NCBI RefSeq assembly: GCF_026571515.1
Contig: NW_026853242.1
Span: 124,001 to 188,000, forward strand
From: Ruditapes philippinarum
Taxonomy: Eukaryota
Reading direction: 5' to 3'
DNA: 64,000 nucleotides
Below the pieces are notes generated by a model. The model made no database searches and was not told where the DNA came from. It saw nothing but the letters and a program-made list of their open reading frames with translations. Shown here piece by piece: positions 14,513 through 34,600 of this stretch (positions are counted from its first letter, which is position 1; every line of letters begins with the position of its first letter). Both the position numbers and the translations under genes were made by a program.

Positions 14513-15061
14513 TCAGTATACATTTAACTCTGCATTCACATGCAACAATATACATAAATACTTGTTGTAAAATAATTATTCTAATATGTGTGCCAGAAAG
14601 AAAATTTTAATTCCAAACATGTGGAATAAAAATGTTGGGGCAATTAAGATTGGAGCAATTTGAGAAGCTTTTGAACCCATTTTTTTGTTTTGACGTTTTC
14701 ATAATAAAACAAGAACTTTTTGGATTTCAAATATGTGTCCTGAAAGTTGGGAAAAGGAAAATAATTCTTAGACAACTAATGCCGACCAAAATATTAAAAT
14801 GTATCATTTCTAATGCTTAATAATTATAAAGTAAGTTTGAAAGGATGTGTCTCAATTAAATTATTATCAGCTGTAACATTTAATATTTTCTGCTGTATGA
14901 CACAAGAACGGGTCAGACGTAGACAGAGTGTATATACATGTATATATACAATGACAGCTCTAATAAAAAGATATCTAAGTCTATGAGTGTGAAAAAATAT
15001 TGCTATTAACTCTTCTTATATTTCAGTGTATAAACAATGTGAAACCTTGACATAAAGTGCA

Positions 15062-18000
15062 ATGGCTCTCCCAGTGGCAGGAATTGTTTGTATCGTGCTA
15101 GCATGCTGGGTTGTTCTCGTCTTGGCTCTCTTTTGTTTGTACAGATTTTTGAAGGTTTGTATTTAACTCAATATTTTGTACTTTCTTGATAGTAAACAAT
15201 AATGCAATATTGCAAGAATACAAATGAACATTTTGCTGTCCTGATTTATATAAACTCTTAAATGCTGGCTGTGATAGGCATCTTAAATTTTCCCAAATGC
15301 TTTATATTTTTTCCCATTTTAAGCCAGGGGCTTTTTCCAAAACAAATGAAAAATATCCCGCATAAAAGAAAACCACCCCCTTGATGTGGCAGTGCAGGGA
15401 TATACAACAGGGCTCGAGCTAGTGGGCGATTCGGGCGAAATAGTCGCCGAATTCCGTCTGTCTTCGCCGACATCCTACATGAAAGCGAAGATGAAGTCGC
15501 CCGATTTTATTGATCCATTATTGAAAATTACCAACAATAACAATAACTGTGAATAACATGTTGTGTGTGTTTGCTTTGTTTACCCTCGCCGCCGGAAAAA
15601 GGGACTGTCATGCATCTCAATCAACGCGAAATGTCATTAATCCATTTGTTTACCAACATGTCATAAAAGTCTAATTAACAGACGCTCGAGGAACAATTAG
15701 ACTCCGCCCACGGCGAGATTACCGATACGTGCGAGAAACCAATCGTAATTCACGTTTTAATCGAGGCGACATTATTTAACCAATCATTAAATCGCTAACA
15801 TACAACTACCTGTAACAATTATTTATGATGGACGGATCAAACGTCAATTAAATTTTCACTATCGAATGATTGTTAGATTTAAGAGGACCGCTCGACATGT
15901 AACGGTAATTTTAAATGGAAGTTATGATAACCTTTTTTGTCGACGAGTTAAATTTGATAAAATTAACGGCGTATTACACTGTATTTATTACAAATGAAGT
16001 TAAATTAAAGATAGTTTTCTTTACAACATAAGTGAATATGAATATAATGTCCGGCGCAAGCTTTTTAATAGTAAATCAGAAGGGAATAACAGTTAATCCA
16101 CCCATGATATGATCCATGATAGGAATCAACTATGGCTTTTTTTATCTTCATTTAATGCAATGGTTGCATTACATGATACTCATTCTTATTTCTTTTTTCA
16201 AACTACTTTTAAACAGAGACATAGATAACAATAGTTATAATAATAGCTATCTATGTCTCTGTTTGAAATTAAAATTGAATATTCTGTTGTAACACAAATC
16301 CAATTCATTTAATAAGATATGTACAGTGAGTCAACATAATTGCGATAACATACAACAAACATCGATAAATGAATCTCCTCACTTCTCTCTAAAGTCTCCC
16401 CACTTCTCCCTAAATCAGCTGGAGGGAGAAGTGACTTCTCCCTAAATTTTGAACCTAGCTTGAGCCCTGTACAATAAAATAAAAAACATCGTATTTTCCC
16501 CTACTATTCCTTGCACTGTTCTAGAGATGCCAGGGTGTGGATTAACAATGGACTGGTGTATTATGCATTATTTATATAACTTTTTACAGACTCGTGGGTC
16601 CTGTGACTGTGATTGTACTCCGTGTGGAACAGAGGGTGGTGAAAGCTGTCCATGTTGTAAAGCTGTGTCCGACTCGTGCGACTGTTGTAATCCTAGTCTA
16701 AATGGTTGTTTAAATTCTGTTTGTCCGAAAAAGGTATGAATAATTGTAATTTATAATTGTAATTTTTACGTTCATGTATGTGTGTGGATCTCTGTAATGT
16801 GAATAGATGTTAACCGGAACTCAGCAAATATGTGGGTTTTTCCCAGCTAATCTGTAGTTACATTGAACTTTTACTGTTATAGCTTCACGGTTCACTGTCG
16901 GTCACAATAGATTAGTCAACCTGTTGTACTTATTTTCGAAGTTGTAACTGTAAAAGTTTTTGTACCGACTGAATAGCTGGGAAAAAACCCAAATGTTCTT
17001 TATTTCGGAGTAAGTCTAATATTATAATTACACATACATTATAATTTTTATGTTATTTAACATAAATGTTTATTTTTTACCTATTTCATATTAATAATAC
17101 ATGTAGTACTGCATTAGTTAAAATGATAAATTAAACATTGAAAACAGTCAATTTTGTATTTTCAAGATTTTACATTGTTTTCCAAATCCCACTTTTGTGT
17201 TCAAGTCTTTTCTTTCTGACTTAGACGCCTTCCCCATATTTTTTGTAGAAAAATAATTGTCAGCCTACTTAACTCAATAGGGAGAGCATTGGCTTTGTTA
17301 TCTAGGGACCACTGTAACAAATTATAATAACAAATTTATAATGCTGTATAAATTTCTTTCTATGACTAAAACAAAAGAGTCATGAAATTATAGCAGCAGT
17401 GTATCTAAGTAATTTAACCATCGTGATTACCAATCAAAATTTAAGTTTCAAACATGCAGTTTGTCTACTAAATAGAGAATATTGAATAAGTGTAAGTTCA
17501 ATTCAGAATTTATTGAACGAATTGAATAAAATTATATTATGCGAGCCTCTGGGGTCATGATATTATTTTATTCAACAAGTGCAATAAATTAAGTAATGAA
17601 GCTACAAGAATTAAATATTCTATTTATCACTTAACAAAAATAGAACTGTTTTCTTTATAAATAAATCACTTTTTCACTGACGCATATTTAGTGTAACATT
17701 TACATTAAGCGTGTCTTTACATTATGTTTGTATGTCACAAATGAGGTCACATCAAAATATATGCATAGCTGTGCAATACTTTTTCACAGAGTCACAGAAG
17801 CGGCATGGGTATGTGATAAAAAGATAGATTTACCTCCCAATTATGTGGAACTCCTTGCATAGACAGAGACAATATTATGAATGTCTACATTAAGGTCGTT
17901 GACTTCAAACCACTTGCCCCTCACCTCTGTACAGGGACTTTGGATTCTTTCATGTGTGGAAGCTATCCAGCTAGCTTATGAAATGTCTGTGGTTCTACTC

Positions 18001-18167
18001 AGTCCCCATTCATACCTGAAATAATACACAGAAAGTGAGGTCTTCCTCCTACAGTAAAGCTGGAAACATTACTTTGTTCCATTTTATTTTAACAGAAAAT
18101 AAGTTGTGTAGATATAATACTGTGTCAGTGCTGTGCCGAACCTGGTCAAGATTCCTGCCTCGTTAAC
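15062..18167 (+). CDS. Uncharacterised single-pass Cys-rich membrane protein, shared exons (15062-15154, 16590-16733, 18096-18167; 103 aa)
   Basis: Acceptor at 15026, in-frame TAA at 15053 upstream of the ATG. All introns GT-AG, phase 0. MALPVAGIVCIVLACWVVLVLALFCLYRFLK | TRGSCDCDCTPCGTEGGESCPCCKAVSDSCDCCNPSLNGCLNSVCPKK | KISCVDIILCQCCAEPGQDSCLVN: N-terminal hydrophobic anchor, basic residues, then 17 Cys in 72 aa. Confidence 0.85.
15408..16469. mobile_element. Non-autonomous TIR DNA transposon, hAT5-like (5-bp TSD), intronic
   Basis: 15-bp TIR CAGGGCTC(G/A)AGCTAG, TSD TACAA (15403-15407, 16470-16474). Confidence 0.85.
17469..17630. repeat. Degenerate palindromic (foldback) element
   Basis: Imperfect arms (AAATAG..AATATT / AATATTCTATTT; TTGAATAAAAT / ATTTTATTCAA) around a GCGAGCCTCTGG core. 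Confidence 0.5.
17891..18067 (+). mobile_element. tRNA-derived SINE family A, truncated copy
   Basis: Shares GACTTCAAACCACTTGCCCCTCAC, GGAAGCTATCCAGCTAGCTTA and GAGGTCTTCCTCC with copies at 54665, 58039 and 63403. Confidence 0.8.
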
Positions 18168-19053
18168 GTAAGTAGAGCATTATTGTGCAGTACATATCAA
18201 CACCAATTTTGTTATCGTTATTTTTGAAGTTCTTTCCTTGTGTCTGTTTTGTCAGTGATTTTTTCATGGCACGTTACTGCATTTTATCATATCGAAAACT
18301 TGTTGTTACATTTTCAACAAAAATTTGATTAATGATCATTAAAAATTGAATAATTCTTTAAAAAGAATGACAAGAAGACAAATATTTGTATATACATAAG
18401 TGTTCAATATAATGTGCATTATTTGATGTCAAGGACAACATTTATTTGCTCTATTTCCTAATTAAAAAGTATTAAAGATAGAATATTGACTTCAGCATTT
18501 GTATTGAGTTATTTGTAATGATATAAGTTAAAAAGTTTCTTGTAATTTTTAATACATTAAAAGCTACACAAGATTGTTATTTATAAATATCATTTTACAT
18601 TTTTTGTATGTCTACATCATTCTTGATAGTAATATAAAGTTTAACATAATTGGTATCCATTTGTTGTGTTTTTTTTCCAATGGATACTAGTAAATTTAGA
18701 GTTATTTCCCTTTGTCAAAGAAATGTATGCAGATGGGCACTTAGTCTGCATGGAAAAATATGTATCATAAGAAAATTTGATAGAATAAAAATAAATTGAT
18801 TTTTTTAACTGAATGACTATACCATGGTAGTGTTTTTCTCCATTTTTACAAGATCTGCATGAATAAATTGTATGTGAACAAAGAGTGCATTTATGTCTTT
18901 TTTGATAAGCTTCTAGGCATAGAGGAACAATGCAGCTTAAATACCTCATAGGGCATGTTTTCTTAATGTCCCTGCATGGATTGATCAGCGGGCATTTTGT
19001 GTTTGTCCTGTTTGTTTGTATGTCCGTCTGTCATTTTGCAAGTGGGCAGCTGT

Positions 19054-19210
19054 AGCATTGGCCGTGATACCTGAATAATATATTATAAACTAGAGCTGTG
19101 TTAATAGCATTGGCCATGTTATCTGAATAATATATTATAAACTAGAGCTGTGTTAATAGCATTGGCCATGTTATCTGAATCATATATTATAAACTAGAGC
19201 GGTGTTAATA
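19054..19210. repeat. 52-bp tandem repeat x3 in a degenerate HINE-like remnant
   Basis: AGCATTGGCC..ATCTGAATAATATATTATAAACTAGAGCTGTGTTAAT at 19054, 19106, 19158. Confidence 0.85.
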
Positions 19211-20521
19211 AGACACGTCATTCTTCAGGACAATAATTTGATTTGAACATCTTAAAGTGTTACCTTGACCCCAAATGAATTTAATTTTCATAGTTAAAGT
19301 TTTTTAAATATAGGAAATTTTACCATAGCTATAGACAGGAGCTTCGTTATAAGAATAGATCTTATTAAGCTTCATGGAATTACATAATGGAATTATCTTA
19401 ACTAATAGAAATGTTCAATTCTATACAGTAACTCACTGGTTTCATTATGTTTTGAAGAACAATTGACATTTCTGAAAGTAAGAGAGTACATATGTGGTAG
19501 CTGGAAATGAATATAAAAGAAGTCACAAAAAGTATTTGGGTAGCCCGCTACATGTACATATTGTAGTGAAAATACCCTATGGCTTGGTCAAATTGAAACC
19601 CCTGTTTCTTCTGTCAATTATGACATTGTATTTTCCAAAAAATTAACGTAAATTTCGATAATAATCGAAAGTTAATTTTTCTTACATTTTGTAATTCATG
19701 ACATTACTGCACCACTGCACCTTCTATGAAAAAATCTTTGTAAAAAATCCCAAGTTTTTAAGAACAGATTTCTTATCTATCATATCACATAAACTCACTT
19801 CAAGTCATTTGCAAAATAAAACACTGATTCGCACAAGGTCTGTTTTTCACTGTATATGCACAGTTAAAAATGTTGTTTGAATATTGTAGAGCTTTTCCAG
19901 GCTTGCAACTGCATCATTCTGTTCTAAATCATAGCAATGTACATGTTTTAAATGTATGTTTATTGTTACTAAAGTACCAAGGTTTTTATTGTTACTGAAG
20001 TAAAACTGGGCTTGTATCCTTTACCACACTAAATAATGAATATCTTAGTATTAGTTATACAGATTTTGACAGGTTATGTGGCCAAATATAACTGGTTATG
20101 TGCTTAATATACAATCCAATCTGCTGCTAGAAAAAGGTTATATAACAAACCTGATTTCATATTTACATGTACAGCCATATTATCCATCAAAATATATGTA
20201 ATCTACAAAAGATCTCACTTCCAGAGATATACAAATGTTTAATACATGTTAACATGGCAAAATGAAATATACACATTTATCATTGCCAAATATATGCTAA
20301 AAGGTTTCTGTTGTTTAATTTAAATGACTCTGATCAAATTTACTTTTGATTTTTTTCCTGAAAACCATATATTTAATGAATTGCTGTATATACTTACATT
20401 AGCAAGGAATAACTAAACTTTAAAACTGGCATGTTTATTTTAATTTTCAGGGTATTTTTTTATCATTGTCAGATTAATTATTGCCTATGCATGCACTATT
20501 GTTTTTGTTTTATATGTCCAG

Positions 20522-20572
20522 TTGTGTAAAGACTGTGGAACGCTGCAAAATCAGCCGGTCACTGGACGGTAG
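20522..20572 (+). CDS. Candidate short alternative terminal exon A of the Cys-rich membrane protein (LCKDCGTLQNQPVTGR*)
   Basis: Acceptor GTTTTTGTTTTATATGTCCAG, phase 0, CxxC, TAG at 20570-20572, AATAAA at 20672. Confidence 0.5.
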   Translation: MCKDCGTLQNQPVTGR

Positions 20573-20732
20573 TTAGGGATGTCATCTTTTTAGAAGATTT
20601 ATAGTTTCATACACTCATGTGTTATATTACAAGTGTAAGTATGAAGAACTTCAACATTTCTTGTCATGCATAATAAAAAAGAGTTAAATGTCAAAATATT
20701 TGTGACATTTAGGAAAGGTTTTGACATTTAAC

Positions 20733-22033
20733 TTTTTATGCCCCCGCCATGTAATGGCCGGGGCATATAGTGTTACCCTGTTCCGTCCTTCCGTCCTTCC
20801 GTCATTCCGTCCTTCCGTCATTCCGTCATTCCGTCATTCTGTCATTCCGTCATCATCAGTTTCCGTTCATTATCTTAGTAACCGTTGCACATATTCAACT
20901 CAAATTTGACATATGGATATGTCATGAGAAAATACAGGTCAAGTTCGAATTTGGTCATGGTTCGATGATTTTTGGCAGAGTTATGCCCCTTTTACTTTGA
21001 AAATAATATGAAATTTTCAGTTTCCGTTCATTATCTCCCCAACGGTACAACACATTCAACTCAAATTTGACATATGGATATGTCATGAGAAAATACAGGT
21101 CAAGTTCGAATTTGGTCATGGTTCGATGATTTTTGGCAGAGTTATGCCCCTTTTACTTTGAAAGTAATATGAAATTTTCAGTTTCCGTTCATTATCTCCC
21201 CAACGGTACAACACATTCAACTCAAATTTGAGATATGGATATGTCATGAGAAAATACAGGTCAAGTTCGAATTTGGTCACGGTTTAACGATTTTTGGCAG
21301 AGTTATGCCCCTTTTACTTTGAAAATGATATGAAATTTTCAGTTTCTGTTCATTATCTCCCCAACGGTACAACACATTCAACTCAAATTTGACATATGGA
21401 TATTTTTTTGGAATGCCAAGGTCAAGTTCGAATTTGGTGATGGTTCAATAATTTTTGGCAGAGTAATGCCCTTTTCACTTTGAAAAAAATATGAAATTTA
21501 CAGTTTCTGTTCATTATCTACCCAACAGTGTTACATATTCAACTCAAATTTGAAATATGGATATGTCAAATGAATGGGCAGGTCAAGTTGGAATTTGGGT
21601 CATGGTTCGATGATTTTTTGGCAGAGTTATGTCCCTTTCACTTTGAAAAATAATATAGATACATCTTAGGAATAGGCAGTTTAAGTTTGAATTTGGTCGT
21701 GGTTCAATGATTTTGGACAAACTTATCTTTCTTGAATATTGGAAAAAATTTTGAACATTCAGATTCAGCACTCATACTTTTGTGGAAATGTATGTAGCCA
21801 TTATTTTGGCTACAAATATGAAATATGCTATTTTCAAAAGGTTAAGACTGAATAATTTCAGTGCTTTGAACATTGTATGAAAATGGTTTGTGTTAACATT
21901 GAAAAGTCTTAAGGGCTTTGAACTTAAAATGGAAACAATAATTTGTGCAAACAAATTTGGAACTAAATATAATAACATCTGAAATTTTGGCTGCATGCGG
22001 GGGCATCCGTGGCATGATGACACATTTCTAGTT
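20733..22033 (+). mobile_element. HINE (Helentron-associated) with five 161-bp satellite units
   Basis: SubTIRs ATGCCCCCGC (20738) / GCGGGGGCAT (21997), (TTCCGTCA)n microsatellite, units at 20857, 21018, 21179, 21340, 21501, terminal hairpin + CTAGTTT, T-rich site and no TSD. Sister copy at 47885-49630. Confidence 0.9.
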
Positions 22034-22234
22034 TTATATATATTTTCACATGCTATGATCATGCTTTGTGAGCAACAACAACAAGTGTACTAACAGTCTC
22101 AGTTATCTCCCTTTATATATCTGGATATTCATGGATACAAAATCATACAGAATTAACCCTTACAATGCTAAATTTATAATTATAATGGACTTTTATTGAT
22201 TTTATATCTCAACTGCTGACTTTTGATCTGCTGA

Positions 22235-22630
22235 ATTTGTGGTATGGATGAATGCCCTGCTTTGAATTCGGAATTGCCTAAGTTTAATGGATTTCAATAT
22301 AAATATCCTGCTTTAAATTTGGAATTGCCCAAGTTTGTGGTATTGATTTGCCCTGCTGTATATTTGGAATTGCCCAAGTTACAGGGATTTCAATATCAAA
22401 ATCCTGCATTGAGTTTGAAATTGCCCAAGTTTGTGGTATGAATGAATGCCCTGCTTTGAATTTGGAATTGCATTTCAATATCAAACTCCTGCTTTGGAAT
22501 TGGAATTGCCCAATTTTGTGGTATGGATGAATGCCCTGCTTTAAGTTTGGATTTGCCAAAGTTTAAGGAATTTCAATATCAAAAAGTTCTTTGGATTTGG
22601 AATTGCCCAAGTTTAAGGGATTTCAATACT
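22235..22630. repeat. Diverged tandem repeat (CCTGCTTTGAATTTGGAATTGCCCAAGTTT core, two alternating unit types)
   Basis: About eight GGAATTGCCCAAGTT-like cores, preceded alternately by GTGGTATGGATGAATG or GGATTTCAATATCAAA. Confidence 0.75.
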
Positions 22631-24087
22631 TAAATTGCTAAAATTTAATATTCTGACCATAATGCAGGGAGTGGTGTTGGTGGAAGAGATTTCTCTAAAT
22701 TGTTGTTCATTAATTGAACTATAAAATACAAATATATTTAGGTCACCTAATGCTAGTATTCTTCAGGCTGTGTTTCAGAGCAGTATATGTATATTTATAT
22801 CAGAACTTGATATTCTTTTATTAGAAAGAAACATGAGACATTTGAGACATTTAGGTGTATGATTTTATTTCTTTGAAATATCCAGATGACTTTCTATAAC
22901 TTGTTTAACTATGTGTTCAAAATAACCAATTATAAATTTTGTTCAAATCAAATTAGATTAAATTACTTTTTGTTCAAATTAAAAAAAAATCTTATAGTTT
23001 TAAAAAAAGTAGTAAATTTATAAATGATTTAAATACATTCTATTTGAACACATAGTTTAATTAAGTTATGTCACACCCGTTTTATTGATTGTTTGGTGTA
23101 AAGCAAATGTGACATTATGTAAATTAGACACAACATCAGATCCATATACTGTGACACTTTATCCTACATTGTAAAACACAATTTTCTTATCATTTTTCGA
23201 ATATATGTATTACTATTTATATCATGTATGCTAGAGCTTGTAGCTATTTATAGCATTTTTTTCTTTCGCTGCATGAATTATAAAACAACAGCACATTATG
23301 TATAGATCTTGTACTTATATCTGTATTAACAACAACACATTCTGTATATTTGTATTATCACTGATATATAACCAGCACAAATTTGGTTTTCTGTACACTT
23401 GTAAACCCCTAAAATGCTAGCAACTATAATGACTTGCCATTACCAGTTAAATACATAGCCAGGGTAGACTGTGTCTCTATCCCTAATATCTAGACTTGTC
23501 CATCATTCATTCTGGACAAAACCGTTTAAGGGAAAATTGTTATAAGAAGTATGGAATGAATAGTGAGCAGTGCAGACCAAACAGATGTGTGGGCTAATCT
23601 AGGTTCTGCACTGATCGCATGAGTAGAATGAGTTGCCGCAAGCAGGCTAATGGTTAAGCAGATTGGTGGAGATACGTAACTTGTGGCTTAAGAATAAATT
23701 GTCTTGTACAGTGGAACCTGTCTAATCTGAACTAGCCCAAACCAGAAGAAAAGTTTGGATTAGATAGGTTTCCAGACTACAATGGTTATTAATTGAAGAC
23801 AATCCCAGAATCTAAAAAAGATTAGGCTAAGTCTATTATACATATCTAGCAAAGTAAAGGCTTTTCTTTTATCACTTGTTCAGTGTCATTTAGTGGTTTT
23901 AATATCACCTGTTCAATGTTAATTAGAGTATAATTTTCTAAGTGTGTCAAAGGTTTAAGGTGGTTTCAAAATGTTTCAAATGACGTTTTTGTTTATATAT
24001 GGCTATAATATTGGTCGGGAACTTTTGTACTTTGTAGATAGATATATCCCTTTGTGTTCTTTGATCTTGAATTATAATATTATTTTA

Positions 24088-24288
24088 ACCGCCTCCGTGG
24101 TCGAGGGGTTAGAGTCGATGACTTCTCTGGCGTGGGTTCAATCCCCGGGATATGCTTTGGTAGTTTAGCGCGAAGGAAGGTAATCTAGTACTGGTGTAAC
24201 TCTCCAGGAACGATGGTTAGGAAACTACCCGCCTTTATGACTGAAATACTGTTGGGAAAAGGCGTAAAATGAAACAAACAAACAAACA
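24088..24288 (+). mobile_element. tRNA-derived SINE family B
   Basis: A-box-like GTGGTCGAGGGG, B-box-like GGTTCAATCCCC, tail GGCGTAAAA followed by (AAAC)n. Confidence 0.7.
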
Positions 24289-24340
24289 TAATAATATTTG
24301 GATATACATTACCAAACCGCAGGCTAATTTTTCAGACTTT

Positions 24341-24580
24341 CGGCCTCTGTGGTCAATGTTTAAGGTTGCTTACATTGAATCAATTTAGCCCTTCGCTGCT
24401 GTGGGTTTGAATCCAATGACTGACGATTAATTCATTATATCTAACAAGGAGTGGATGAGTCTGTTTCTAAGGTACCAATTTGTGCCTGAAAAAATGCACA
24501 GAGTGGCACTGAGGTCTTCCTCAAACAAAAAAGCTGAAAAAGTCGCTTTATGACCCTCACTGCGTCAGATTGACTTAAAA
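24341..24580 (+). mobile_element. SINE family A, diverged copy
   Basis: GTGGGTTTGAATCC B-box, TGCCTGAAAAAATGCAC..GGCACTGAGGTCTTCCTC, AAGTCGCTTTATGACC. Confidence 0.65.
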
Positions 24581-24939
24581 ATTCATGACCTTGAATAAAA
24601 TTTGAGTCATGATAGACTGTATAAGATTGTGGAATGTGAAGAAATTTTAAAATTCAGTTAGGCAGTCCTGATACTGAATCTTAATTGGTTTTGTTTTTTT
24701 GTGTGTTTAAAAAGGGGTCAATACATAACAAAACTTTCATTAAAATCCAAAAACCTTAATCTTATCTAAAACTATCCATGTTATATAAAACTTTGATAGC
24801 TTTCCATAATAGATCTCAGAGTAGAGAACAATATCATTCACATGTCTGTCTGTAACAATATGTACATGTAGCGTGTGCCGAGAAATGTATATACTCTCCC
24901 TTTTTCTATCTGAAACAAAATTACTAACTCATCTTAAAC

Positions 24940-26031
24940 CTGGTGTCAGTATTGTATGATATAGCTGATGTCAGTATTGTATCATACAGCTGGTGTCAGT
25001 ATTGTATCATACAACTGGTGTCAGTATTGTATCATACAACTTGTGTCAATATTGTATCATACAACTGGTGTCAGTATTGTATCATACAACTGGTGTCAAT
25101 ATTGTATCATACAACTGATGTCAGTATTGTATCATACAACTGGTGGCAGTATTGTATCATACAACTTGTGTCAATATTGTATCATACAACTGGTGTCAGT
25201 ATTGTATCATACAACTGGTGTCAATATTGTATCATACAACTGATGTCAGTATTGTATCATACAACTGGTGTCAGTATTGTATCATACAACTGGTGTCAGT
25301 ATTGTATCATACAACTGGTGTCAGTATTGTATCATACAGCTGGTGTCAGTATTGTATCATACAACTGGTGGCAGTATTGTATCTAACAGCTGGTGTCAGT
25401 ATTGTATCATACAACTGGTGTCAGTATTGTATCATACAGCGGGTGTCAGTATTGTATCATACAACTGGTGTCAGTATTGTATCATACAACTGGTGTCAGT
25501 ATTGTATCATACAACTGGTGTCAGTATTGTATCATACAACTGGTGTCAGTATTGTATCATACAGCTGGTGTCAGTATTGTATCATACAACTGGTGTCAGT
25601 ATTGTATCATACAACTGGTGTCAATATTGTATCATACAACTGGTGCCGGTATTGTATCATACAACTGGTGTCAGTATTGTATCATACAACTGGTGTCAGT
25701 ATTGTATCATACAACTGGTGCCAGTATTGTGTCATACAACTGGTGCCAGTATTGTATCATACAACTGGTGCCGGTATTGTATCATACAACTTGTGGCAGT
25801 ATTGTATCATACAACTGGTGTCAGTATTGTATCATACAAACTGGTGCCAGTATTGTATCATACAGCGGGTGTCAGTATTGTATCATACAACTGGTGCCAG
25901 TATTGTATCATACAACCTGGTGTAAGTATTGTATCATACAACTTGTGGCAGTATTGTATCATACAACTGGTGTCTGTATTGTATCACACAGCTGGTGTCA
26001 GTATTGTATCATACAACTGGGGGCAGTATTG
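24940..26031. repeat. 25-bp minisatellite, about 43 copies (ACTGGTGTCAGTATTGTATCATACA)
   Basis: Directly visible head-to-tail array with few variants, intronic. Confidence 0.98.
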
Positions 26032-26602
26032 GAAATATATGAGTGTATGTTACTATAAATCTATATTCATTTTTTTTTCATTGTAACTTTTGAAACATTT
26101 TGAAACCACTATACACACTGATATATTATTTTTATCCTTTTTTTGGCATGGTGTTTAATGTGGAGTTTATAATATGTGTATGTGTTTTGTAACCTCTGTG
26201 TTTTAATTACCATTATATGGCTTATATGATACCTTTGATATTTCTTTACAAGAACAGAGCCAGTCTATTGTCCAACTTTAGTCTTTATTGGTAATGTCCA
26301 TTGAATGTCATTTAGATTCTTTATGTACTAGTTATGTAATTCAACATCTGTGCTTCAATTATAATATGGTTCCCACCTCCATATCCCTTGTGATTCATCT
26401 GATTCCCTAGTAGGGCATCCATGGTTGTTGGACTTTGAGGTGGTCATTTTGGTTTTATCACATACAATGGTATTTTCTATATTTTAAAGTGGCTCAAAAT
26501 GCATTTTATTTAGCCTCCAGCTGTCTTGTCTTAACCTCATCCCTTGCTTTATATGAGAATCACCCGAGTTCTTCCTGCACCTGTTAGGCTGACAAGTCAA
26601 AC

Positions 26603-26818
26603 TACTGTAAAATAAGTATTTTTTTCAAGGGATTAAATTTTGCTCATTTTGCAGATCGAAGATGTTTGCAAAAAAAAAAGTTTGTTCTCTAAGAATCTAA
26701 ATGTCATATAGATTTAACTGAAATGTGAGAAAAATTTTGGAAAATTTTACCTTGCCAATCAGTCTGAAATTTTGAAAGTGTGAAATTTTGTCCCTGCGGA
26801 AATTTCTGGTTTTACAGA
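26603..26818. mobile_element. Degenerate short MITE (TACTGTAAAA...TTTTACAG)
   Basis: Terminal inverted CTGTAAAA/TTTTACAG with internal GCGAAAATT-like inverted motifs, decayed. Confidence 0.5.
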
Positions 26819-27301
26819 AGTACAGGTTGACTCACTAAGAATGGTTTACCAAAATTAGAAGTTGCTTGAAATAAAGTATATAAGTGATAAGCTTGGAATT
26901 TTGTATACGTTCCTGGAACACACATAATTTTAATATACCAACATCAGCAGGGGTTGTTCATACATGTACATAAAACTTTTCCTTTTATGATTGGTTTAGG
27001 ACAAGATAAAATTATTTACATATGTATTTGGTTAGTACTTGAAAAATATAAAAAGAAAACATTGGAATATTCTATTCAAGTATTTGAGACTTGTAATTTA
27101 TATCTATATTATAAATATACTGTCATAACTGCATTTGTATGTATGCATTTAGTATTTAAGATTTGGAATTTATAATTATTTAATAATTATACTAACACAG
27201 TTGCATTATGTATGCATTTCTCTATATTGAGAAAAAAGCATTTAAACCAAAAAAATAACTTTTCTTACGATCATCTCTGATCATTATTTTTATTATGACA
27301 G

Positions 27302-28240
27302 ATTTTTCCATGTTGCACGAGAGATTGTGAATGTTGTGACGATGGTTGTTGCATGTGTTGTGCAGACTGTGACGCCCTTGTTTGTTGCTGTTTGGAGATC
27401 AGACTGGTATCAAAAAGTGCGTCGGACAAAAACACGTCTAATGTGGCAGCAAAATACACACCAAACTACTCAAAAACTGAAATATATACAAATAAATCAA
27501 ACCAAAATAACTCTGGGAAAGACAATTCAGCGTCAACTAAAGCAGGTAATTCTGCTAAGTCAACTATAAATCAGGGAACAAAAAAGTCATCATCTGAAAA
27601 AAGTTTGGGTATTAGAAGTACTCAGAGTACACCAAGAGCTCCCAATTCATCAAGGTCTGTCAGTCAGCTACAGTTAGAATACTCTAGCAGCTCCAGTACC
27701 AGACAGCTTAAGACAGGCAAACCAACTACCAAAATGAAACCACCATCAGGGATAAGTAGAAAATCAGACACAAAATCAAACACATCAAGCACAAGGTCAC
27801 TTCCTGGACCACCAACAATACCTCCTAAATTGAAGAGTTCAGATAAAAATAAACTTAAACCTGGCTCTAGAAAAAGAACAAGTAGTGAGCCTTCAGCTAG
27901 TGAGTTGAAAGAGGTACCAGTAAAACAGCAAAGTGTCCTTTTACATTCACATTTATATGAAAGCACATATTCTATTGGGTCAGGAAGCTTTCATGGTGGC
28001 CAAGATTTAATTCTTGGATTACCTCCTCAATTTGATGCATCATCTCAGGCAGCTTTATTAGATTCTAGTTCTCTTAACAGACATGGTTATTCTAGTTTGC
28101 CTCAAATGAGTCCGGGAACCATTCTAGATGGTTCTGGTACCCATAGGAGTTCAGCGGCTGGTTCCACTTTCAGTGTACATTTTGAAGATATTAATTCTCT
28201 GGCTTCACCACGACCGTTACCGGGACTACCAGCAAGATAG
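27302..28240 (+). CDS. Alternative terminal exon B of the Cys-rich membrane protein (312 aa: Cys cluster + Ser/Lys/Thr-rich disordered tail)
   Basis: Acceptor TTATTTTTATTATGACAG at 27301, phase 0. IFPCCTRDCECCDDGCCMCCADCDALVCCCLEIRL continues the Cys pattern of exon 3. 939-nt open frame, AATAAA at 28308 and 28346. Confidence 0.85.
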   Translation: MFPCCTRDCECCDDGCCMCCADCDALVCCCLEIRLVSKSASDKNTSNVAAKYTPNYSKTEIYTNKSNQNNSGKDNSASTKAGNSAKSTINQGTKKSSSEKSLGIRSTQSTPRAPNSSRSVSQLQLEYSSSSSTRQLKTGKPTTKMKPPSGISRKSDTKSNTSSTRSLPGPPTIPPKLKSSDKNKLKPGSRKRTSSEPSASELKEVPVKQQSVLLHSHLYESTYSIGSGSFHGGQDLILGLPPQFDASSQAALLDSSSLNRHGYSSLPQMSPGTILDGSGTHRSSAAGSTFSVHFEDINSLASPRPLPGLPAR

Positions 28241-29155
28241 CAGTTAATCATGATGGAAATGCGTAAGTCTTTAAAACTATTAGATAGACAAATGTATTCT
28301 ACTGGTAAATAAATTATTGACACCCTTTAAATATAATTATGTTTCAATAAAATAAAACAAAACTTTATTCTACTGAACTGACTTTTTGATATTTTATTTA
28401 AAATAAGAGTTGGCAATTTGGGTCTTTTACTAATTTTGTTCCAGCCAGGTAAGTTTAATCATGGATTTATATATTAAACATCAGTGGTTTAATTGAGGTA
28501 AGTAAAATTGTTAATAGTTAATTGTTTGTTAATTTTGTTTGTTTGGTTACAACTTACAAGAGATCACATTGACATTTTAATAATACAACTTAAAGCATTA
28601 CTTTGTCAAATCGGATTTAATACTACATTTAAGGGGTTTGTTCCTAAAACAAGATACTATTATATAATACAATGAATTAATTTCATTTTCCTACGTAACA
28701 ACAACGTTAAATGATGCATTGTGCTACTGCATTTTAATTGATCCAGTGCCCTTATATTATATTATACATAATTAAGCATGATTTGTTATGATTTTAACAA
28801 ATGTAGTTTACTAGTATGGTGAAACAAAAACAAAGGCATTGATACTGTGCATTTTGCTAGATGATTTATGAATGTTGAAATGTGGAATTTGATAACAGAT
28901 ATGTATCTAGTCAGCTTTAATAACCCAATGATTTAAGTGTAATGTGTGAAGATTTTGTAGAAAGTTGTCTGCCTAGCTATAACTAACAAAATGTTGGTGC
29001 TCTGTGCACCTGAGATAATTTATGCAAATCTGTTTAGGCTTTACTTTTGTGTTTGTACCTAAAGCATGTCTGTTTTGCCAGAATTTTATGCTAAAAGATG
29101 AAATTGATCCATGTAAACTTTTAAAATAACATCACAATTTTGATGTATATTTCAG

Positions 29156-31687
29156 ACATTACAGTACATATTTTGTTGTCCGTTGAAGTGTGCAGCGGAA
29201 CATTGTTTGATCGGTAAACCAGAGACGGCGATACCAAAGTGGCAGTATGAAGGCAAAACTTTCTGGGAGTGGACTAAATCGAAGATGGGTTACTCATTGA
29301 AATGTACAGACTGTGCCTGCATGACGTGCTATAAATTGACGGAAGATGATTCTAATATTTGTTCATCATTCAGGGCTTGTTGGTCAGACATTCGGGCCAA
29401 AAAACCTTTGTCCTGTAAGTGCCTTGAGAATGATTGTACAAACCCGTTAACAGCTTTGTGTTCAAGAATTAGTGACTGGAAGTGTCTAAAATGTGCCAAA
29501 GACAATGACAGTTTAAGTGTGTGTGACAGTTGCAATTTCTTTTCTGTTGTTAAGTCAGAACCTTTTATATGTCCAACTTACAAAATGAGAGTAAGTGCTA
29601 ATTTAAGAGATATGACACGATGTCCGAGTTGCCCGGACCATGTGCTTTGTTTCACGTGCGTAGAGGATCAGTTTGTCAATTGTTGTTGTCATTACGTGTT
29701 TTTTAATAGGTGCGGTGATCCTTACTTCCGTTACGATGACAAAGAAGATATCTGCTCGTTTAGAGAATCCAACTTTTGTTCGTTCATGTTTCAAGTTCTT
29801 TTAAACATTCCACGTCTTCTATGTTTTGGTTGTGTAGGGCTGTGTGAAAACAATGTCAGATGTTGTTACTTCACTTCTATTAACTTTGCTAGTCTACTAT
29901 GCTGTAAATGCTCAGATGAGGAATTTTGCCTCAGTTATACGTGTCTATGTTTCGATTGTGAAAAGATCACGAAAAAGGAAATAGGTCAGACGAATGAAGA
30001 CTTACAGAGCTGCAAATGTGGTTGTTGTATTTACATGAAAAGAAAGCATTATCCATTTCTTGATTTTGATATTGACATTAAGGAACCAGTAGACTCTGTT
30101 CAAACCACCAGTGATGAAAGCCTTGTAAACACTCAACCTAAAGCAAGCAGAGAAGCAATTTATCTTGACAGTCATAGAATTAATTCAATGTTTGAAATTG
30201 TTAATGAGACACAAGAGAGCTTTGATGAGTCTTCAGATAAAACAAATCTTGTTTCCAAGAATGAGTCTTTAGATAAAACAAATCTTGTTTCCAAGACAAA
30301 TCTTGTTTCCAAGAATTCTAAAAGAAAAAGCCAGCAAGGAAGAAGCTCTGTTAGTAAATCAGCTATACATGCACACCATGATAAAGGTAGAAATGTCAAT
30401 TCAGAATTGGATACTTCTAGTGAGAGTAGCTTTTCTTATCTTGATGTTAAACAAATACATGCATTGCAGAAGAAACTAATATATAGTGATGATGAAATAG
30501 ACCCTGAGGTAAAGGAAATTGATGATACAGATGTTGTGAAAAGAAAACAAAGAAAAGGCCATTTTGATAAAAGTGGTGGGAGAAAGAGACAAAATATTTC
30601 TAGAAGTTCTGGTGGTGGAAGAAAGAGACAAAATATTTCTAGAAGTTCTATGTCGAGAGAAGATTCTTTTGAGGCACCTAAATTTCATAAAACAGGTATT
30701 TTGAAAAGTGAATCAACTACACTAGGTGATGAAAACTGTGACACTGAATCAGAACCATTTTCAATATATAGCAGTAGTAGAGAAAATGAACATAGAACCA
30801 GAAAAAAAGCTCATTTTGCAAATGAAGATGCAGTATTGATAAAAGAACTCTTCCCAGTTAAAGACTCTGACACAAGTTTAAATGGAAAGCTAGTTTCAGA
30901 AATTTCCAATGAAATTTACGAAAGCAATGCAGATGTTAGTTGCAAAAGAAAGAGAAAAGTGGATGATAAGAAATTAAGGTCAAGGAAAAAATCAACTACA
31001 AGCAGTTCCCGTGGCAATGATCTTGGAAGGTCACTTAGCAAATCAAACAGTTCCATTGGCACTGATCTTGGAAGGTCGCTTAGCAAATCAAACAATTCCA
31101 GTGGAAATGATCTTGGAAGGTCACTTAGATCCTATGGCAATGATCTTGGTATGTCGCTTAGCAAAACAAACAGTTCCAGTGAAAATGGTCTTGGACGGTC
31201 GCTTAGCAAATCAAACAGATCCCGTGGCAATAATCTCGGAAAGTCACTTGGCAAATCAAACAGTTCCAGTGGCAATGATCTTGGAAGGTCACTTAGCAAA
31301 TCAAACAGTTCCTTTGGAAATGATGTTGGTAAGTCACTTAGCAAATCAAACAGTTCCATCAGAAGTGATCTTGAAAGGTCAACTTGCAAATCAAGCAGGT
31401 CCGGTGGAAATGATCTTGGTAAGTCACTCAGCATATCAAACCGGCTCCTTCACTCTGAACAGAATTTCAACGGCAGTAAAACAAAAAGATCTTCAAGGAA
31501 GAAAACAAGTTCTGGTAAGAGACAGGCCATTGAAACTGAAGAATTAAGAAAGTGTGATGATGTTGTAATAGTTGAATATGATTCATCAGAGGAATATTTT
31601 GCTGTGGACAAAGATTTTGTTGTAGACAAAGTATCATGTAAAGAGGACGAAATGAAAATAGAAGATATAGAGGACCTGTCAGATTAA
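29156..31687 (+). CDS. Alternative terminal exon C (843 aa: ~45-Cys region + acidic/basic disordered tail with 15-aa repeats)
   Basis: Acceptor TATATTTCAG at 29155, phase 0, frame opens TLQYIFCCPLKC with no ATG at its start. 2532-nt open frame in AT-rich DNA, AATAAA at 31737 and 31743. Coding status is well supported; linkage to the upstream exons is inferred. Confidence 0.8.
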   Translation, partial: TLQYIFCCPLKCAAEHCLIGKPETAIPKWQYEGKTFWEWTKSKMGYSLKCTDCACMTCYKLTEDDSNICSSFRACWSDIRAKKPLSCKCLENDCTNPLTALCSRISDWKCLKCAKDNDSLSVCDSCNFFSVVKSEPFICPTYKMRVSANLRDMTRCPSCPDHVLCFTCVEDQFVNCCCHYVFFNRCGDPYFRYDDKEDICSFRESNFCSFMFQVLLNIPRLLCFGCVGLCENNVRCCYFTSINFASLLCCKCSDEEFCLSYTCLCFDCEKITKKEIGQTNEDLQSCKCGCCIYMKRKHYPFLDFDIDIKEPVDSVQTTSDESLVNTQPKASREAIYLDSHRINSMFEIVNETQESFDESSDKTNLVSKNESLDKTNLVSKTNLVSKNSKRKSQQGRSSVSKSAIHAHHDKGRNVNSELDTSSESSFSYLDVKQIHALQKKLIYSDDEIDPEVKEIDDTDVVKRKQRKGHFDKSGGRKRQNISRSSGGGRKRQNISRSSMSREDSFEAPKFHKTGILKSESTTLGDENCDTESEPFSIYSSSRENEHRTRKKAHFANEDAVLIKELFPVKDSDTSLNGKLVSEISNEIYESNADVSCKRKRKVDDKKLRSRKKSTTSSSRGNDLGRSLSKSNSSIGTDLGRSLSKSNNSSGNDLGRSLRSYGNDLGMSLSKTNSSSENGLGRSLSKSNRSRGNNLGKSLGKSNSSSGNDLGRSLSKSNSSFGNDVGKSLSKSNSSIRSDLERSTCKSSRSGGNDLGKSLSISNRLLHSEQNFNGSKTKRSSRKKTSSGKRQAIETEELRKCDDVVIVEYDSSEEYFAVDKDFVVDKVSCKEDEMKIEDIEDLSD
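31013..31440 (+). repeat. Coding 45-bp tandem repeat (GNDLGRSLSKSNSSS, about 10 copies)
   Basis: GGCAATGATCTTGGAAGGTCACTTAGCAAATCAAACAGTTCCAGT units, frame preserved even across the shortened unit. Confidence 0.95.
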
Positions 31688-34600
31688 AGAAAATATTATC
31701 TATTAGACAGAGTTATGATGGATAGTAAACTGACCAAATAAAAATAAAGCAGTCTTTGATAGATTAGCACAAAAGGGAGGTAACCACATTTAATGTAAAA
31801 GGGAAGTAATCATATTTATTTAAAGCTGAAATAATGAGGTATAATATTAATTTTCATAGAAGGCAGTTTAATCTGAAAACCAGTCTTGTAGTTGTACAAA
31901 TTCTTTTATGTTTAATGTGGAAATGTTTGTTTGAAAATAATTTCACTTTATGTTAATTAACCTAACATAAGAATGTGTTGTTAGTAAGTAATGACTTTAG
32001 ATAATGTATTGATTTATCACTTATCAGATGATTGAAATGCAGGGAAATATTTGTTAAATTATTGAATGTATGTCTGTATTGAATGAGCTAGAAATAGTAA
32101 TTTGTGCTTAGTGATATTTTTAAACCTCGTGCTTGAGTGGTTAAGATATAGATTTATTAATTTTTTTCGACTGTTCTATTGTTTAAACTTTGTTCATTCA
32201 GTCACATGTATTTGGTAACAATAGTAAATTATAGTTATATTTTACTTTTTGGCCGTCCAATGTTAGTTTATAGTTATATTTTTCTTTTTGGCCGTCCAAT
32301 TCTTTTTTTCTTCACTGTTTTATGTTGTTGTTTAGTATTTTATAAAATTATTATTATCAATATGTTTTTACATTATATTATATTATATAATAAATAAATT
32401 TGGGCACTATTTTTATCCATGTATTTTTACATTCATTGTGCCTTACTTAACAAAGTTGTAGAGAATTATGTTGGATATTTAGTTAGTATTTCAAAGAATC
32501 TCTTCATAAATTGTTTCTTTTATGTCTATTATGAATGGTATATTATACATATACAAATACTTACAAATTATTTAAAGGTAAATAGTTTTATCCTCTTTGT
32601 CTAATTGAAGCTCATTGTTGGATTTGTGAATGTTGGCGTAATAATTCTTTCTATTAGCAGCTTCAACATTACTTAAAGACATTGTCAACCAAACTTTTGC
32701 AGAAAGGTTGTCACTAAGTGCCTTGAAGCATATTATCTGAATATTATCTGAATGTCATTTGATTATTTTGGGCAAAATTTTGGCCCATCTTTTTTCACAT
32801 ATGTAAATTTGGTTGTAAACCAGATTTTGTAACAATATATTATATTGGCAGTTGTGAATATTTTTTTGTGAATTTTTTCAGTAATTCATTTTGAGATTTT
32901 CCATTTAAAAATGTTATGATGCCTTATCAGAGGCTGGTATAGTAATCAAGTATTTAGCATTATTAAACACTAAGTAATTTTATACCTGTTTTGATGTGTA
33001 GCTTCAGTTATCAATATAAAGGTTACCATCCAAGGTCCATCACTCTTGCTTGAATTTTTACTGAATCATGGCCCTTTGTGAACAAAATTCCTGGTTTAAC
33101 GTTCAAAACTATTGAAGGCATTCACTTCAGACTTATAAAATTTCAAGTCCAATAACTCGGGTGTATTTTGATTTTTTTATGGCCCTTTGTGAACTTGCAA
33201 ATGTACTTGGGAACATAACTTAAGGTCACTGTCCAAGGCCCATAACTCTCAGATGTATTTGACTGATGGCCATTTGTGAACTAAGAAAAAAGCTTTTAGT
33301 TAATGGTACTGACAACACCAATCTTGAAAGCTACTGATCTTTATTCAACACGTTTTTGTGATCATAATTTAAGGTTGTAGGGAAGGCCCACAAATTGCTC
33401 CTTTTTTTTATAATGAAAAACCCTTTTTCCCTGTTGTAAAAAACAATTTTTTTGATTCAGCACTGGGTTTTTTTGTCAACCCCAAAACCAAAAAGTTGAG
33501 TATTTAGTTTCCCAAATGACAGTTTTTGTTTAAAAATAGGCACTATTTAAATAAATTTTTTGTGAAAAGTAAAATTTTTAGAGTGGGTTTAAAGGTAATG
33601 ATTTTTGCCTCAACCTAGGAAATTTATGGGGGTTTTTCCTTTTAAAATTTGGATAAAACCCATCTTTTTCCCCATATGAAATAGTACTGGTTAAGTTTTG
33701 GCCCAAAAAGGTTTTTTTAAAAGCCTTGAGCCTTCAAATTTTAGCCCAAATAAAATTTTATTAATAATTTAATAAACCCAAAAAAATTCAAGAGTTTTAC
33801 ATGTAAATGTATAATGATTTTTCTTTCACCAGTTTGAGCTGGAAAGATGCCATAATGACTTGTAATGTTTAAACCATCTGCTTTAATAAAACCCAAGGAA
33901 AACCAATCTTACATCTACATTGTATATCCATATATTGGTTAAGGCATTAAGTTACGAGTCAATACGTCATTTATCAAAAGACATTTATTGTTTGTTTAGG
34001 ATTTATTGGCATATTTAAATCTGATATTATCTCGACAACTTCCTGATAGCCTACAATTATTTATTATATATTAACCTGAAGCAGAAAATGTTAAAATGAT
34101 ATAATTGTTAAAAATACAGAATAATTGTTTATTTGTAAGTTATAATGCCTCGTTTATTAAAACAGGTCATCATAATTCATACTAAACTATCTACATGTTC
34201 AATTTGGCTGCTCATTTTGAAACATTTTGTCATTTTAAAAGTCATTAAAAGTAATAATGGTGAAAGTGGTTTTTATAGAAATTTAGTAACTGTATCCCAA
34301 AGTTACACATAAAAGCAGGGTAGGGGGTTTAATGTTCATGTCAGCATTAGTCATAATTTCATATGTATAATATTTATATCTTTCTTATTTTTGAGAAAGT
34401 ATGAGTTTAAATAGAGTTACTGATTTTTAGTTCGGAAAAAATTTTGTATGCATATTGGCATGTCCAAAACTATAATGAAGGTTTTACACACTTGTTCTCA
34501 GTGATTATTTAACATATTTGGCACAGGTCACATAACTCTGAATTATCTTTTTACAGAGTTATTCCACATTCTTACTCTCGAGCACTGAGAATAGTCGAGC

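What the first reader, a model, noticed from the sequence alone, without database searches (positions are those of the whole stretch)
15062..31687. Unnamed Cys-rich membrane anchor with swappable C-termini (three phase-0 terminal exons: 16, 312 and 843 aa)
Seen: a 103-aa shared N-terminus (hydrophobic anchor + dense Cys cluster) ends at a phase-0 donor (18167). Three downstream acceptors (20522, 27302, 29156) all open in phase 0 with Cys-containing sequence, and each has its own stop and AATAAA. The 2.5-kb frame at 29156 has no ATG at its start and begins only ~0.9 kb after the previous stop. B and C share one architecture: a Cys block ending in a similar motif (VCCCLEIRL vs CKCGCCIYMK), then a long Ser/Lys-rich disordered tail. 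Inference: one gene uses alternative last exons to attach tails differing ~50-fold in length to one membrane anchor (119, 415, 946 aa). Basic residues after the TM suggest the Cys region is cytosolic, so palmitoylation or metal binding is more likely than disulfides. I cannot assign a known family. Automated annotation would probably split or truncate this locus.
Basis: partly seen in the sequence, partly recalled or inferred. Interest (0 to 1): 0.8.

Follow-up and report, generated by a model that had tools for sequence, protein, structure and literature searches.

The report
Clam membrane-anchor gene with stop-carrying switch exons
This is a real, bivalve-specific gene for a small cysteine-rich membrane protein, but its alternative tails sit in internal exons that carry their own stop codons and splice onward, not in three separate last exons, so tail choice would work by exon skipping.

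Summary

RNA assemblies from three studies contradict "three terminal exons".
- Exon A is internal (20522-20634). Its donor joins 27302.
- Exon B is internal (27302-28262). A GTAAGT donor 22 nt after its stop joins 29156.
- Nothing covers B's AATAAA.
- No contig joins 18167 to 27302 or 29156.

Orthologues support part of the idea. Mya arenaria RefSeq has a 120-aa isoform (anchor plus a 15/16-identical A tail) and a 386-aa isoform (anchor joined directly to a B-like tail).

C is conserved upstream of its first ATG, so translation must enter it from an upstream phase-0 donor. Which donor is unknown.

A metagenome bivalve contig repeats the layout: B-like exon, donor 29 nt after the stop, then an ATG-less open frame of 1,032 codons.

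Exon A also carries an ATG conserved in frame with B, so an anchor-less B is possible.

Best reading: one gene with serial stop-carrying cassette exons.

The parts
15062..15154 (+). Exon 1 (coding part): ATG plus 31 codons, an N-terminal signal-anchor/TM helix followed by basic residues. The 5' limit of the exon is unknown.
   Evidence: Sequence and splice sites. Kyte-Doolittle 3.26 over 19 residues. 24/31 identical to residues 1-31 of Mya arenaria XP_052801029/XP_052801028.
16590..16733 (+). Exon 2: 48 codons, 25% Cys, phase 0/0.
   Evidence: Single copy in the genome. HMMER hits P0015 (87% identity) and P0017 (60%, E 1.3e-4). 28/47 identical to Mya residues 33-80.
18096..18167 (+). Exon 3: 24 codons, Cys-rich, ending at a phase-0 donor AAC|gtaagt.
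   Evidence: 21/24 identical to Mya residues 81-104.
20522..20634 (+). Exon A, a 113-nt internal (cassette) exon. In the anchor frame it gives 16 codons, then TAG at 20570-20572. It also holds a mini-ORF ATG at 20579 and a second ATG at 20617 (MCYITS) that is in frame with both the B and C acceptors. The donor AGT|gtaagt lies after 20634.
   Evidence: The 3' end and donor are shown by loose ends before 27302 in X1, X4 and X9, which equal window 20605-20634. The 16-aa tail is 15/16 identical to the C-terminus of Mya isoform X2. The ATG is conserved as MCY/MC in P0005, Mactra P0008 and Dreissena P0009/P0014. The acceptor at 20522 is inferred, not read.
27302..28262 (+). Exon B, a 961-nt internal exon: 312 codons (Cys block ending in CCCLEIRLVS, then a Ser/Lys/Pro-rich disordered tail ending in SPRPLPGLPAR), TAG at 28238-28240, and a donor TGC|gtaagt 22 nt later.
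   Evidence: Acceptor and donor are used in three RNA assemblies. Eight homologues in bivalves. Aligns to Mya X1 residues 114-381, 105/260 identical. 9 of 15 listed SNPs are synonymous.
28796..29108 (+). Transcribed piece inside the B-C intron, seen mainly in run X9. It could be partial intron retention or an internal start.
   Evidence: X9 contig 16 has depth 4.5 against 5.6 for exon B. X4 has depth 0.6-1.9 and X1 has 0. There is no ATG-bearing phase-0 first exon in 28263-29155, and there are 16 ATGs (none in the C frame) from 28796 to the acceptor at 29156.
29156..31687 (+). Exon C coding part: 843 codons open from the acceptor, with no ATG before codon 44. It comprises a ~300-aa Cys-rich region (15% Cys) and a ~540-aa Ser/Lys-rich tail. 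The 3' UTR runs on to at least ~31750-32100.
   Evidence: The acceptor is used. P0001 is 38% identical over the Cys-rich part, and the alignment begins at residue 28. Single copy. In the Cys-rich part 5 of the 6 listed SNPs are synonymous.
30999..31441 (+). About ten 45-nt (15-codon) tandem repeats inside the C tail (GNDLGRSLSKSNSS-type units).
   Evidence: Tandem Repeats Finder; translation.

Best explanation
This is one transcription unit, the Manila-clam orthologue of Mya arenaria LOC128231842.

It encodes a small membrane protein with an N-terminal membrane-spanning helix. Basic residues right after the helix put the very Cys-rich segment that follows on the cytosolic side, where it is probably S-acylated or metal-binding (inferred).

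Downstream lie three coding exons in series. Exon A (113 nt) and exon B (961 nt) are internal exons. Each ends its reading frame with its own stop codon and then offers a strong GTAAGT donor, 62 nt and 22 nt after the stop respectively.

With everything included, the mRNA runs A to B to C (these two joins are shown). Its first reading frame would end in exon A, giving the 119-aa protein; the link of exons 1-3 to exon A is inferred from the orthologue.

The donor of exon 3 and the acceptors of B and C are all phase 0. Skipping A would therefore attach the 312-aa B tail to the anchor (415 aa, as in Mya isoform X1). Skipping A and B would attach the 843-aa C tail (946 aa, inferred only).

The C-terminus is thus chosen by exon skipping, not by alternative polyadenylation.
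For: - Joins A>B and B>C occur in Logan RNA assemblies of three studies, with zero depth in the flanking introns (loose end located).
- The anchor continues into the A tail in Mya isoform X2 (120 aa, tail 15/16 identical). It continues directly into a B-like tail in isoform X1 (386 aa). Both are collinear with the window's exons.
- All splice sites are canonical and all phases are 0.
- C is conserved upstream of its first ATG (residues 28-43). It is closed by TGA three codons before the B>C join. No ATG-bearing first exon exists in the B-C intron. Translation must therefore enter C from another phase-0 donor.
- The layout recurs on metagenome contig L007. There a B-like exon starts exactly where Mya X1 leaves the anchor, a GTAAGT donor lies 29 nt after the stop, and 1.6 kb further on a phase-0 acceptor opens a 1,032-codon open frame with no ATG for 107 codons.
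- Synonymous SNPs are in excess in B (9/15, p=0.002) and in C (9/25, p=0.047).
- B, C and exon 2 are single copy in the genome.
Against: - No clam contig shows 18167>27302 or 18167>29156. The only partner seen for 27302 is exon A, and the only one seen for 29156 is exon B. Contigs drop rare forms, and one loose-end row was not shown.
- Depths of B and the start of C are similar, so B-skipping is minor in these samples.
What lies upstream of exon A in the A>B contigs (456 nt in X9) was not shown.
- A conserved ATG in exon A, in frame with B, points to an anchor-less B.
- The Mya isoforms are predicted models whose RNA support I could not inspect.
- No orthologue with anchor + C was found.
Confidence: 0.55

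Rival explanations
1. This is a multi-ORF (polycistronic or overlapping-gene) locus. The anchor protein (119 aa) ends in exon A. B is a separate, anchor-less protein of 318 aa started at the conserved ATG 20617 in exon A, with an N-terminal Met-Cys. It is translated either from the same mRNA by reinitiation or from a transcript that starts in intron 3 or exon A. C would be a third product, for example via 20634>29156, which is also in frame.
For: - A>B is the only join into B in three assemblies.
- The ATG is kept in frame with B in four species although the following residues and their number differ: MCYITS here, MCYNHS in P0005, MCYIDY in Mactra KAL4223508, and MCCLLS plus 8 more in Dreissena XP_052248432. 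'FHTLMC' is shared with Dreissena P0014.
- The Mactra and Dreissena public models give B without an anchor.
Against: - The anchor ATG has a strong context (G at -3, G at +4) and is followed by a 119-codon frame and a mini-ORF, so scanning ribosomes should rarely reach 20617.
- ORF pickers choose the longest frame on an A-included transcript, so those models need not reflect translation.
- Mya X1 joins the anchor to B directly.
- Six codons are little to judge coding conservation by.
Confidence: 0.3
2. One reading: three alternative last exons, each ended by its own poly(A) site, attached to exon 3.
For: - AATAAA lies after each stop.
- The phase-0 geometry fits.
- Exon A could still double as a composite terminal exon using AATAAA 20672.
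Against: - Donors after 20634 and 28262 are used in all three assemblies.
- Depth is 0 at 28300-28699, where B's signals lie.
- No join from 18167 to 27302 or 29156 was seen.
- A donor just after the B stop is conserved in L007.
Confidence: 0.07
3. C is an independent downstream gene with its own start in the B-C intron. The B>C join is a read-through ('conjoined') transcript of two neighbouring genes.
For: - X9 has a contig at 28796-29108 at a depth close to that of the exons, and its C depth exceeds its B depth.
- P0001 was called as a stand-alone ORF.
Against: - The C frame is shut by TGA at 29141-29143, and no ATG between 28796 and the acceptor at 29156 is in the C frame.
- None of the donor-like sites in 28263-29155 follows an open frame with an ATG.
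- Conservation starts upstream of the first in-frame ATG.
- P0001's first three residues fit an intron end read through, with AAG as the acceptor (inference).
- The intron piece is absent in X1 and very weak in X4.
Confidence: 0.12

Closest known systems
Mya arenaria LOC128231842 (RefSeq XP_052801028.1 isoform X1, 386 aa; XP_052801029.1 isoform X2, 120 aa, auto-named 'keratin-associated protein 5-9-like')
   Same: Collinear with the window exon by exon: TM anchor 24/31, exon 2 28/47, exon 3 21/24, A tail 15/16, B tail 40%. The two isoforms share the anchor and differ in the tail.
   Different: No C-type isoform is on record there. The models are predictions without function. In the clam the A-included form that runs on to B and C is what the RNA assemblies show.
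B-only public models: Dreissena polymorpha XP_052248432.1 (278 aa) and Mactra antiquata KAL4223508.1 (343 aa)
   Same: They have the same B tail motifs: CCCLEIRLVS, RSLPxPP, ELKEVPV, PDLILGLP, GTILDGSGTHRS and a C-terminal SPRPLPxPxxR. They begin at the Met-Cys start that lies in exon A here.
   Different: They have no membrane anchor. They may simply be the longest frame on A-included transcripts.
Stop-carrying cassette ('poison'/switch) exons and composite terminal exons (textbook cases: IgM secreted/membrane switch, calcitonin/CGRP)
   Same: An internal exon with an in-frame stop decides which C-terminus is made. Skipping it restores the downstream frame.
   Different: Here two such exons stand in series and each encodes a complete, conserved tail. 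The fully included mRNA appears abundant rather than degraded. B's poly(A) signals are not used in the samples read.
Animal bicistronic mRNAs (for example SNURF-SNRPN, Drosophila stoned; from general knowledge)
   Same: Several conserved reading frames lie one after another on one spliced transcript.
   Different: Independent translation of the downstream frames is not shown here. C has no start codon of its own.

Membership tests
Orthologue group of Mya arenaria LOC128231842 (uncharacterised bivalve TM/Cys-rich protein) | N-terminal TM helix plus a Cys-rich segment, collinear over the same three exons | tested here: met
   24/31, 28/47 and 21/24 identities in order. HMMER E 1.3e-4 with exon 2 alone.
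Orthologue group of Mya arenaria LOC128231842 (uncharacterised bivalve TM/Cys-rich protein) | Short isoform ending in the 16-aa tail LCKDCGTLQNQP.TGR | tested here: met
   Exon A frame 0 gives the same tail, 15/16 identical, followed by a stop. The join 18167>20522 itself was not read in the clam.
Orthologue group of Mya arenaria LOC128231842 (uncharacterised bivalve TM/Cys-rich protein) | Long isoform with the anchor joined directly to the B tail | tested here: inconclusive
   The frames allow it and Mya X1 has it. The three clam assemblies show only A>B.
Alternative last exons (each with its own poly(A) site, not spliced onward) | The exon is not spliced to anything downstream | tested here: not met
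   Donors after 20634 and 28262 are used in X1, X4 and X9.
Alternative last exons (each with its own poly(A) site, not spliced onward) | Transcripts end at the exon's own poly(A) signal | tested here: not met
   For B, depth is 0 over 28300-28699 in three assemblies. For A this was not tested. For C coverage runs past the stop and the 31737 signal, falling off in X1 and X9 but continuing to 32899 in X4; no end was mapped (contigs cannot show one).
Stop-carrying cassette exon | Internal exon with an in-frame stop, whose skipping restores the downstream frame | tested here: met
   The exon 3 donor and the B and C acceptors are all phase 0. Stops lie at 20570-20572 and 28238-28240.
Stop-carrying cassette exon | Both included and skipped forms exist | tested here: inconclusive
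   The included form is seen in the clam. The skipped form is known only from the Mya X1 model.
Keratin-associated protein 5 (the automatic name of the Mya isoform) | Match to keratin-associated protein Pfam models | tested here: not met
   No Pfam family at E<=10 for exons 1-3, P0017 or P0018. The name reflects Cys content only.
MDFI / I-mfa Cys-rich domain (a lead from memory) | Match to the Pfam MDFI model | tested here: not met
   No hit at E<=10 in B, its eight homologues, P0018 or the anchor exons.
Polycistronic mRNA | Two or more conserved frames on one transcript | tested here: met
   X9 contig 15 holds the end of exon A (only the 30 letters next to 27302 were shown), all of B and the start of C. 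X4 contig 10 holds the end of B and 1.4 kb of C.
Polycistronic mRNA | Independent translation of the downstream frames | not testable with these tools
   Needs ribosome profiling or proteomics.

The most novel reading that the evidence does not exclude
The abundant, fully included mRNA is truly polycistronic. Three unrelated, separately conserved proteins would all be made from one bivalve transcript by reinitiation or internal entry, with splicing only tuning the ratios. These are the 119-aa membrane anchor, an anchor-less Met-Cys-started B of 318 aa, and the ~800-aa C.
Probability: 0.1. Interest if true: 0.75.

Novelty: new variant of a known kind. Interest (0 to 1): 0.42.

Why it matters
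- It corrects the gene model. Annotators have split this locus into anchor-only, B-only or fused models in Mya, Mactra and Dreissena, and have apparently left the 2.5-kb C frame unannotated.
- It gives a clean natural case in which two serial stop-carrying exons could switch one membrane anchor between a 16-aa, a 312-aa and an 843-aa tail.
- The B tail ends in conserved RxxPxxP-type motifs. That suggests a membrane-tethered docking protein for SH3-type partners (inference).
- The fully included mRNA has splice junctions 62 nt and several kb downstream of the first stop, yet it is the form assembled in three studies. This makes it a handy test case for how molluscs treat such transcripts.
- None of this is fundamentally new biology. 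The family is lineage-restricted and its function is unknown.

Tried and rejected
- **Loose ends at 27310 and 31522.** Their letters map to another contig, C1842. That locus shares only 17-20 nt with the window, and B, C and exon 2 have no paralogue. These are chance partial matches, not joins.
- **Family assignment.**
  - Pfam gave nothing at E<=10 on all pieces and on the homologues. This rejects MDFI and KRTAP.
  - PDB sequence search gave nothing.
  - The ESM Atlas gave no usable hit for Mactra B, whose stored model has pLDDT 0.36.
- **B and C related?** hhalign probability is 0.6%, so this is rejected.
- **AlphaFold2 of the C Cys-rich region** with a two-row alignment gave mean pLDDT 29. 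It is useless, so no fold search was run.
- **C relatives.**
  - Two word searches found only P0001.
  - A metagenome scan found none.
  - The large frame on L007 is a positional analogue only: BLASTP E 0.04, hhalign probability 1%.
- **Exon A on L007.** It is not present in the 2.3 kb upstream of the B-like exon. The intron here is 6.7 kb.
- **Raw-read run X23.** It laid only 59 reads, many with loose ends at GATC sites, and gave no junction evidence.
- Isoform lengths are sums of exon lengths.
Full report
**Setting.** The window is AT-rich animal DNA from a 1.4-Gb assembly. Earlier notes of this scan call the genome Manila clam; I did not verify that. All features lie on the + strand.

**Observation.**
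- Exon 1 (15062-15154) is an ATG plus 31 codons and holds a very hydrophobic 19-residue stretch (Kyte-Doolittle 3.26) followed by basic residues.
- Exon 2 (16590-16733) has 48 codons and is 25% Cys.
- Exon 3 (18096-18167) has 24 codons.
- All three are open, flanked by canonical AG and GT sites, and in phase 0.
- The acceptors at 20522, 27302 and 29156 open frames of 16, 312 and 843 codons.
- AATAAA follows each stop.
- The first in-frame ATG of C is codon 44.

**Transcript evidence.** One reads call was allowed, on at most 6 kb. I laid 26900-32899 because B and C sit there and because an assembled contig that enters an acceptor carries letters of its upstream exon.

Three Logan assemblies from three studies (X1, X4, X9) cover exons B and C. 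They have zero depth at 26900-27099 and 28300-28699 and they carry GT..AG joints, so they are RNA-derived. Three results matter.
- In all three, the contig entering 27302 is preceded by the same 30 letters, which are window 20605-20634. Exon "A" is therefore internal (20522-20634, 113 nt), with a used donor AGT|gtaagt.
- In all three, exon B is joined from 28260-28262 to 29156. The one- or two-letter differences are a SNP at the exon end. Exon B is therefore internal (961 nt), with a donor TGC|gtaagt 22 nt after its TAG. Its poly(A) signals are not covered.
- Every loose end or joint listed at 29156 comes from the end of exon B (one further loose-end row was not shown). No contig shows letters of exon 3 before 27302 or 29156.

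Depths of B and of the first kilobase of C are similar, so most transcripts in these samples contain both. X9 alone also has a contig at 28796-29108, inside the B-C intron, at exon-like depth. The raw-read run X23 gave too few reads to add anything.

**Frames.** In the anchor frame, exon A gives 16 codons and then TAG (20570-20572), 62 nt before its donor. The B>C join cannot make one protein, because in the C frame a TGA lies three codons before the junction. Exon A also holds an ATG at 20617 (MCYITS) whose frame reaches the donor in phase 0. It is therefore in frame with both B and C.

**Is the anchor part of this gene?** I searched exon by exon and built no joined protein.

The full HMMER search with exon 2 found P0017. 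Cluster look-up identifies it as Mya arenaria XP_052801029.1, isoform X2, 120 aa. Its cluster mate P0018 is XP_052801028.1, isoform X1, 386 aa. Exon-wise alignment gives these identities:

| Window part | Mya residues | Identical |
|---|---|---|
| Exon 1 | 1-31 | 24/31 |
| Exon 2 | 33-80 | 28/47 |
| Exon 3 | 81-104 | 21/24 |
| A tail | 105-120 of X2 | 15/16 |
| B | 114-381 of X1 | 105/260 |

So an orthologue in another order has public models for anchor + A tail and for anchor joined directly to a B tail.

Combined with the clam joins A>B and B>C, this chains exons 1-3, A, B and C into one locus. One link is missing in the clam itself. The join 18167>20522 and the identity of the sequence upstream of exon A in the A>B contigs were not read.

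One weak arithmetic hint exists. X9's contig carries 456 nt upstream of 27302. That equals exon A + exon 3 + exon 2 + 127 nt of exon 1, which would put its end at 15028, next to an acceptor-like site at 15026/15027.

**B.** The word search found eight homologues, all bivalve. Conserved motifs run to the last residue: CCCLEIRLVS, RSLPxPP, ELKEVPV, PDLILGLP, GTILDGSGTHRS and a C-terminal SPRPLPxPxxR.
- P0002 and P0006 show intron ends read through (…Q before the exon), which places the acceptor exactly at 27302.
- P0005 (MCYNHS), Mactra KAL4223508 (MCYIDY) and Dreissena XP_052248432 (MCCLLS…) start at a Met-Cys that corresponds to ATG 20617 here.
- Dreissena P0014 even shares FHTLMC with frame 2 of exon A.

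This conserved, frame-preserving ATG is the main argument for an anchor-less B. The counter-argument is that ORF pickers take the longest frame on an A-included transcript.

**C.** Only P0001 is related. It is 38% identical over the Cys-rich 300 residues, with further similarity in the tail.
- The alignment begins at residue 28, upstream of the first ATG.
- An open run of 43 ATG-less codons has roughly a 4% chance at this base composition (my estimate).
- Listed SNPs are enriched for synonymous changes. For B it is 9/15 against 0.23 expected (p=0.002). For C it is 9/25 against 0.20 expected (p=0.047). In the Cys-rich part of C it is 5 of 6.
- An allele in X4 replaces 72 nt of a repeat by 18 nt, which keeps the frame.
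- The B-C intron offers no ATG-bearing phase-0 exon.

C is therefore coding, and translation must enter it from a phase-0 donor other than B's. Neither join was seen.

**Conservation of the layout.** A metagenome contig (L007) carries a B-like exon that starts exactly at the residue following the anchor in Mya X1 (44% identity).
- Its stop is followed 29 nt later by GA|GTAAGT.
- 1.6 kb further on, ttttcag|G opens, in phase 0, a 1,032-codon open frame without an ATG for 107 codons.
- That frame is Cys-rich, with hydrophobic helices, and then Ser-rich.
- It is not significantly similar to C apart from a short N-terminal motif shared with P0001. I count it as a positional analogue.

**What it is not.**
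- No Pfam family matches any piece or any homologue.
- There is no PDB relative.
- B and C are unrelated to each other.
- The AlphaFold model of C is unusable.
- There are no paralogues in the genome.
- The loose ends at 27310 and 31522 are chance 17-20-nt matches to a transcript of contig C1842.

**Verdict.** The tails are not three last exons; they are serial exons, two of which carry a stop followed by a donor.

The 946-aa form remains a frame-compatible inference.

The gene family is uncharacterised and confined, as far as the searches reach, to heterodont bivalves.

Noticed in passing
window 24940-26031: A 25-nt satellite, about 44 copies at 92% identity, lies in the A-B intron. It produces long spurious ORFs in three frames.
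   Followed up: no
window 20856-21656 and 22236-22615: Tandem arrays of 161-nt units (5 copies) and 96/51-nt units lie just downstream of exon A, in the same intron.
   Followed up: no
window 30261-30334: The X4 assembly carries an allele in which 72 nt of the 36-nt repeat region of C are replaced by 18 other letters. The net change is -54 nt, so the frame is kept.
   Followed up: partly
G000:C1842:41150-42300 (loci L002-L004), minus strand: An expressed locus on another contig shares 17-20-nt strings with the B acceptor region and with 31522-31541 of C. Its contigs were partly laid on the window in three runs. No wider similarity was found.
   Followed up: yes
run X23 on window 29700-31400: A run labelled RNA-Seq gave reads whose unmatched ends start or stop at GATC. 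This looks like restriction/ligation chimeras rather than plain cDNA.
   Followed up: no
window 12996-13463, minus strand: A 155-codon ORF resembling the C-terminal end of a retrotransposon reverse-transcriptase ORF lies about 1.6 kb upstream of exon 1.
   Followed up: no
window 32100-32899: X4 still shows depth 5-36 more than 1 kb past the C stop. This is either a long 3' UTR or repeat-derived contigs.
   Followed up: no
P0014 (Dreissena polymorpha KAH3721931.1): A 713-aa GenBank model fuses a protein-kinase-like gene to the B-type protein. It is probably an annotation merge of neighbouring genes.
   Followed up: partly
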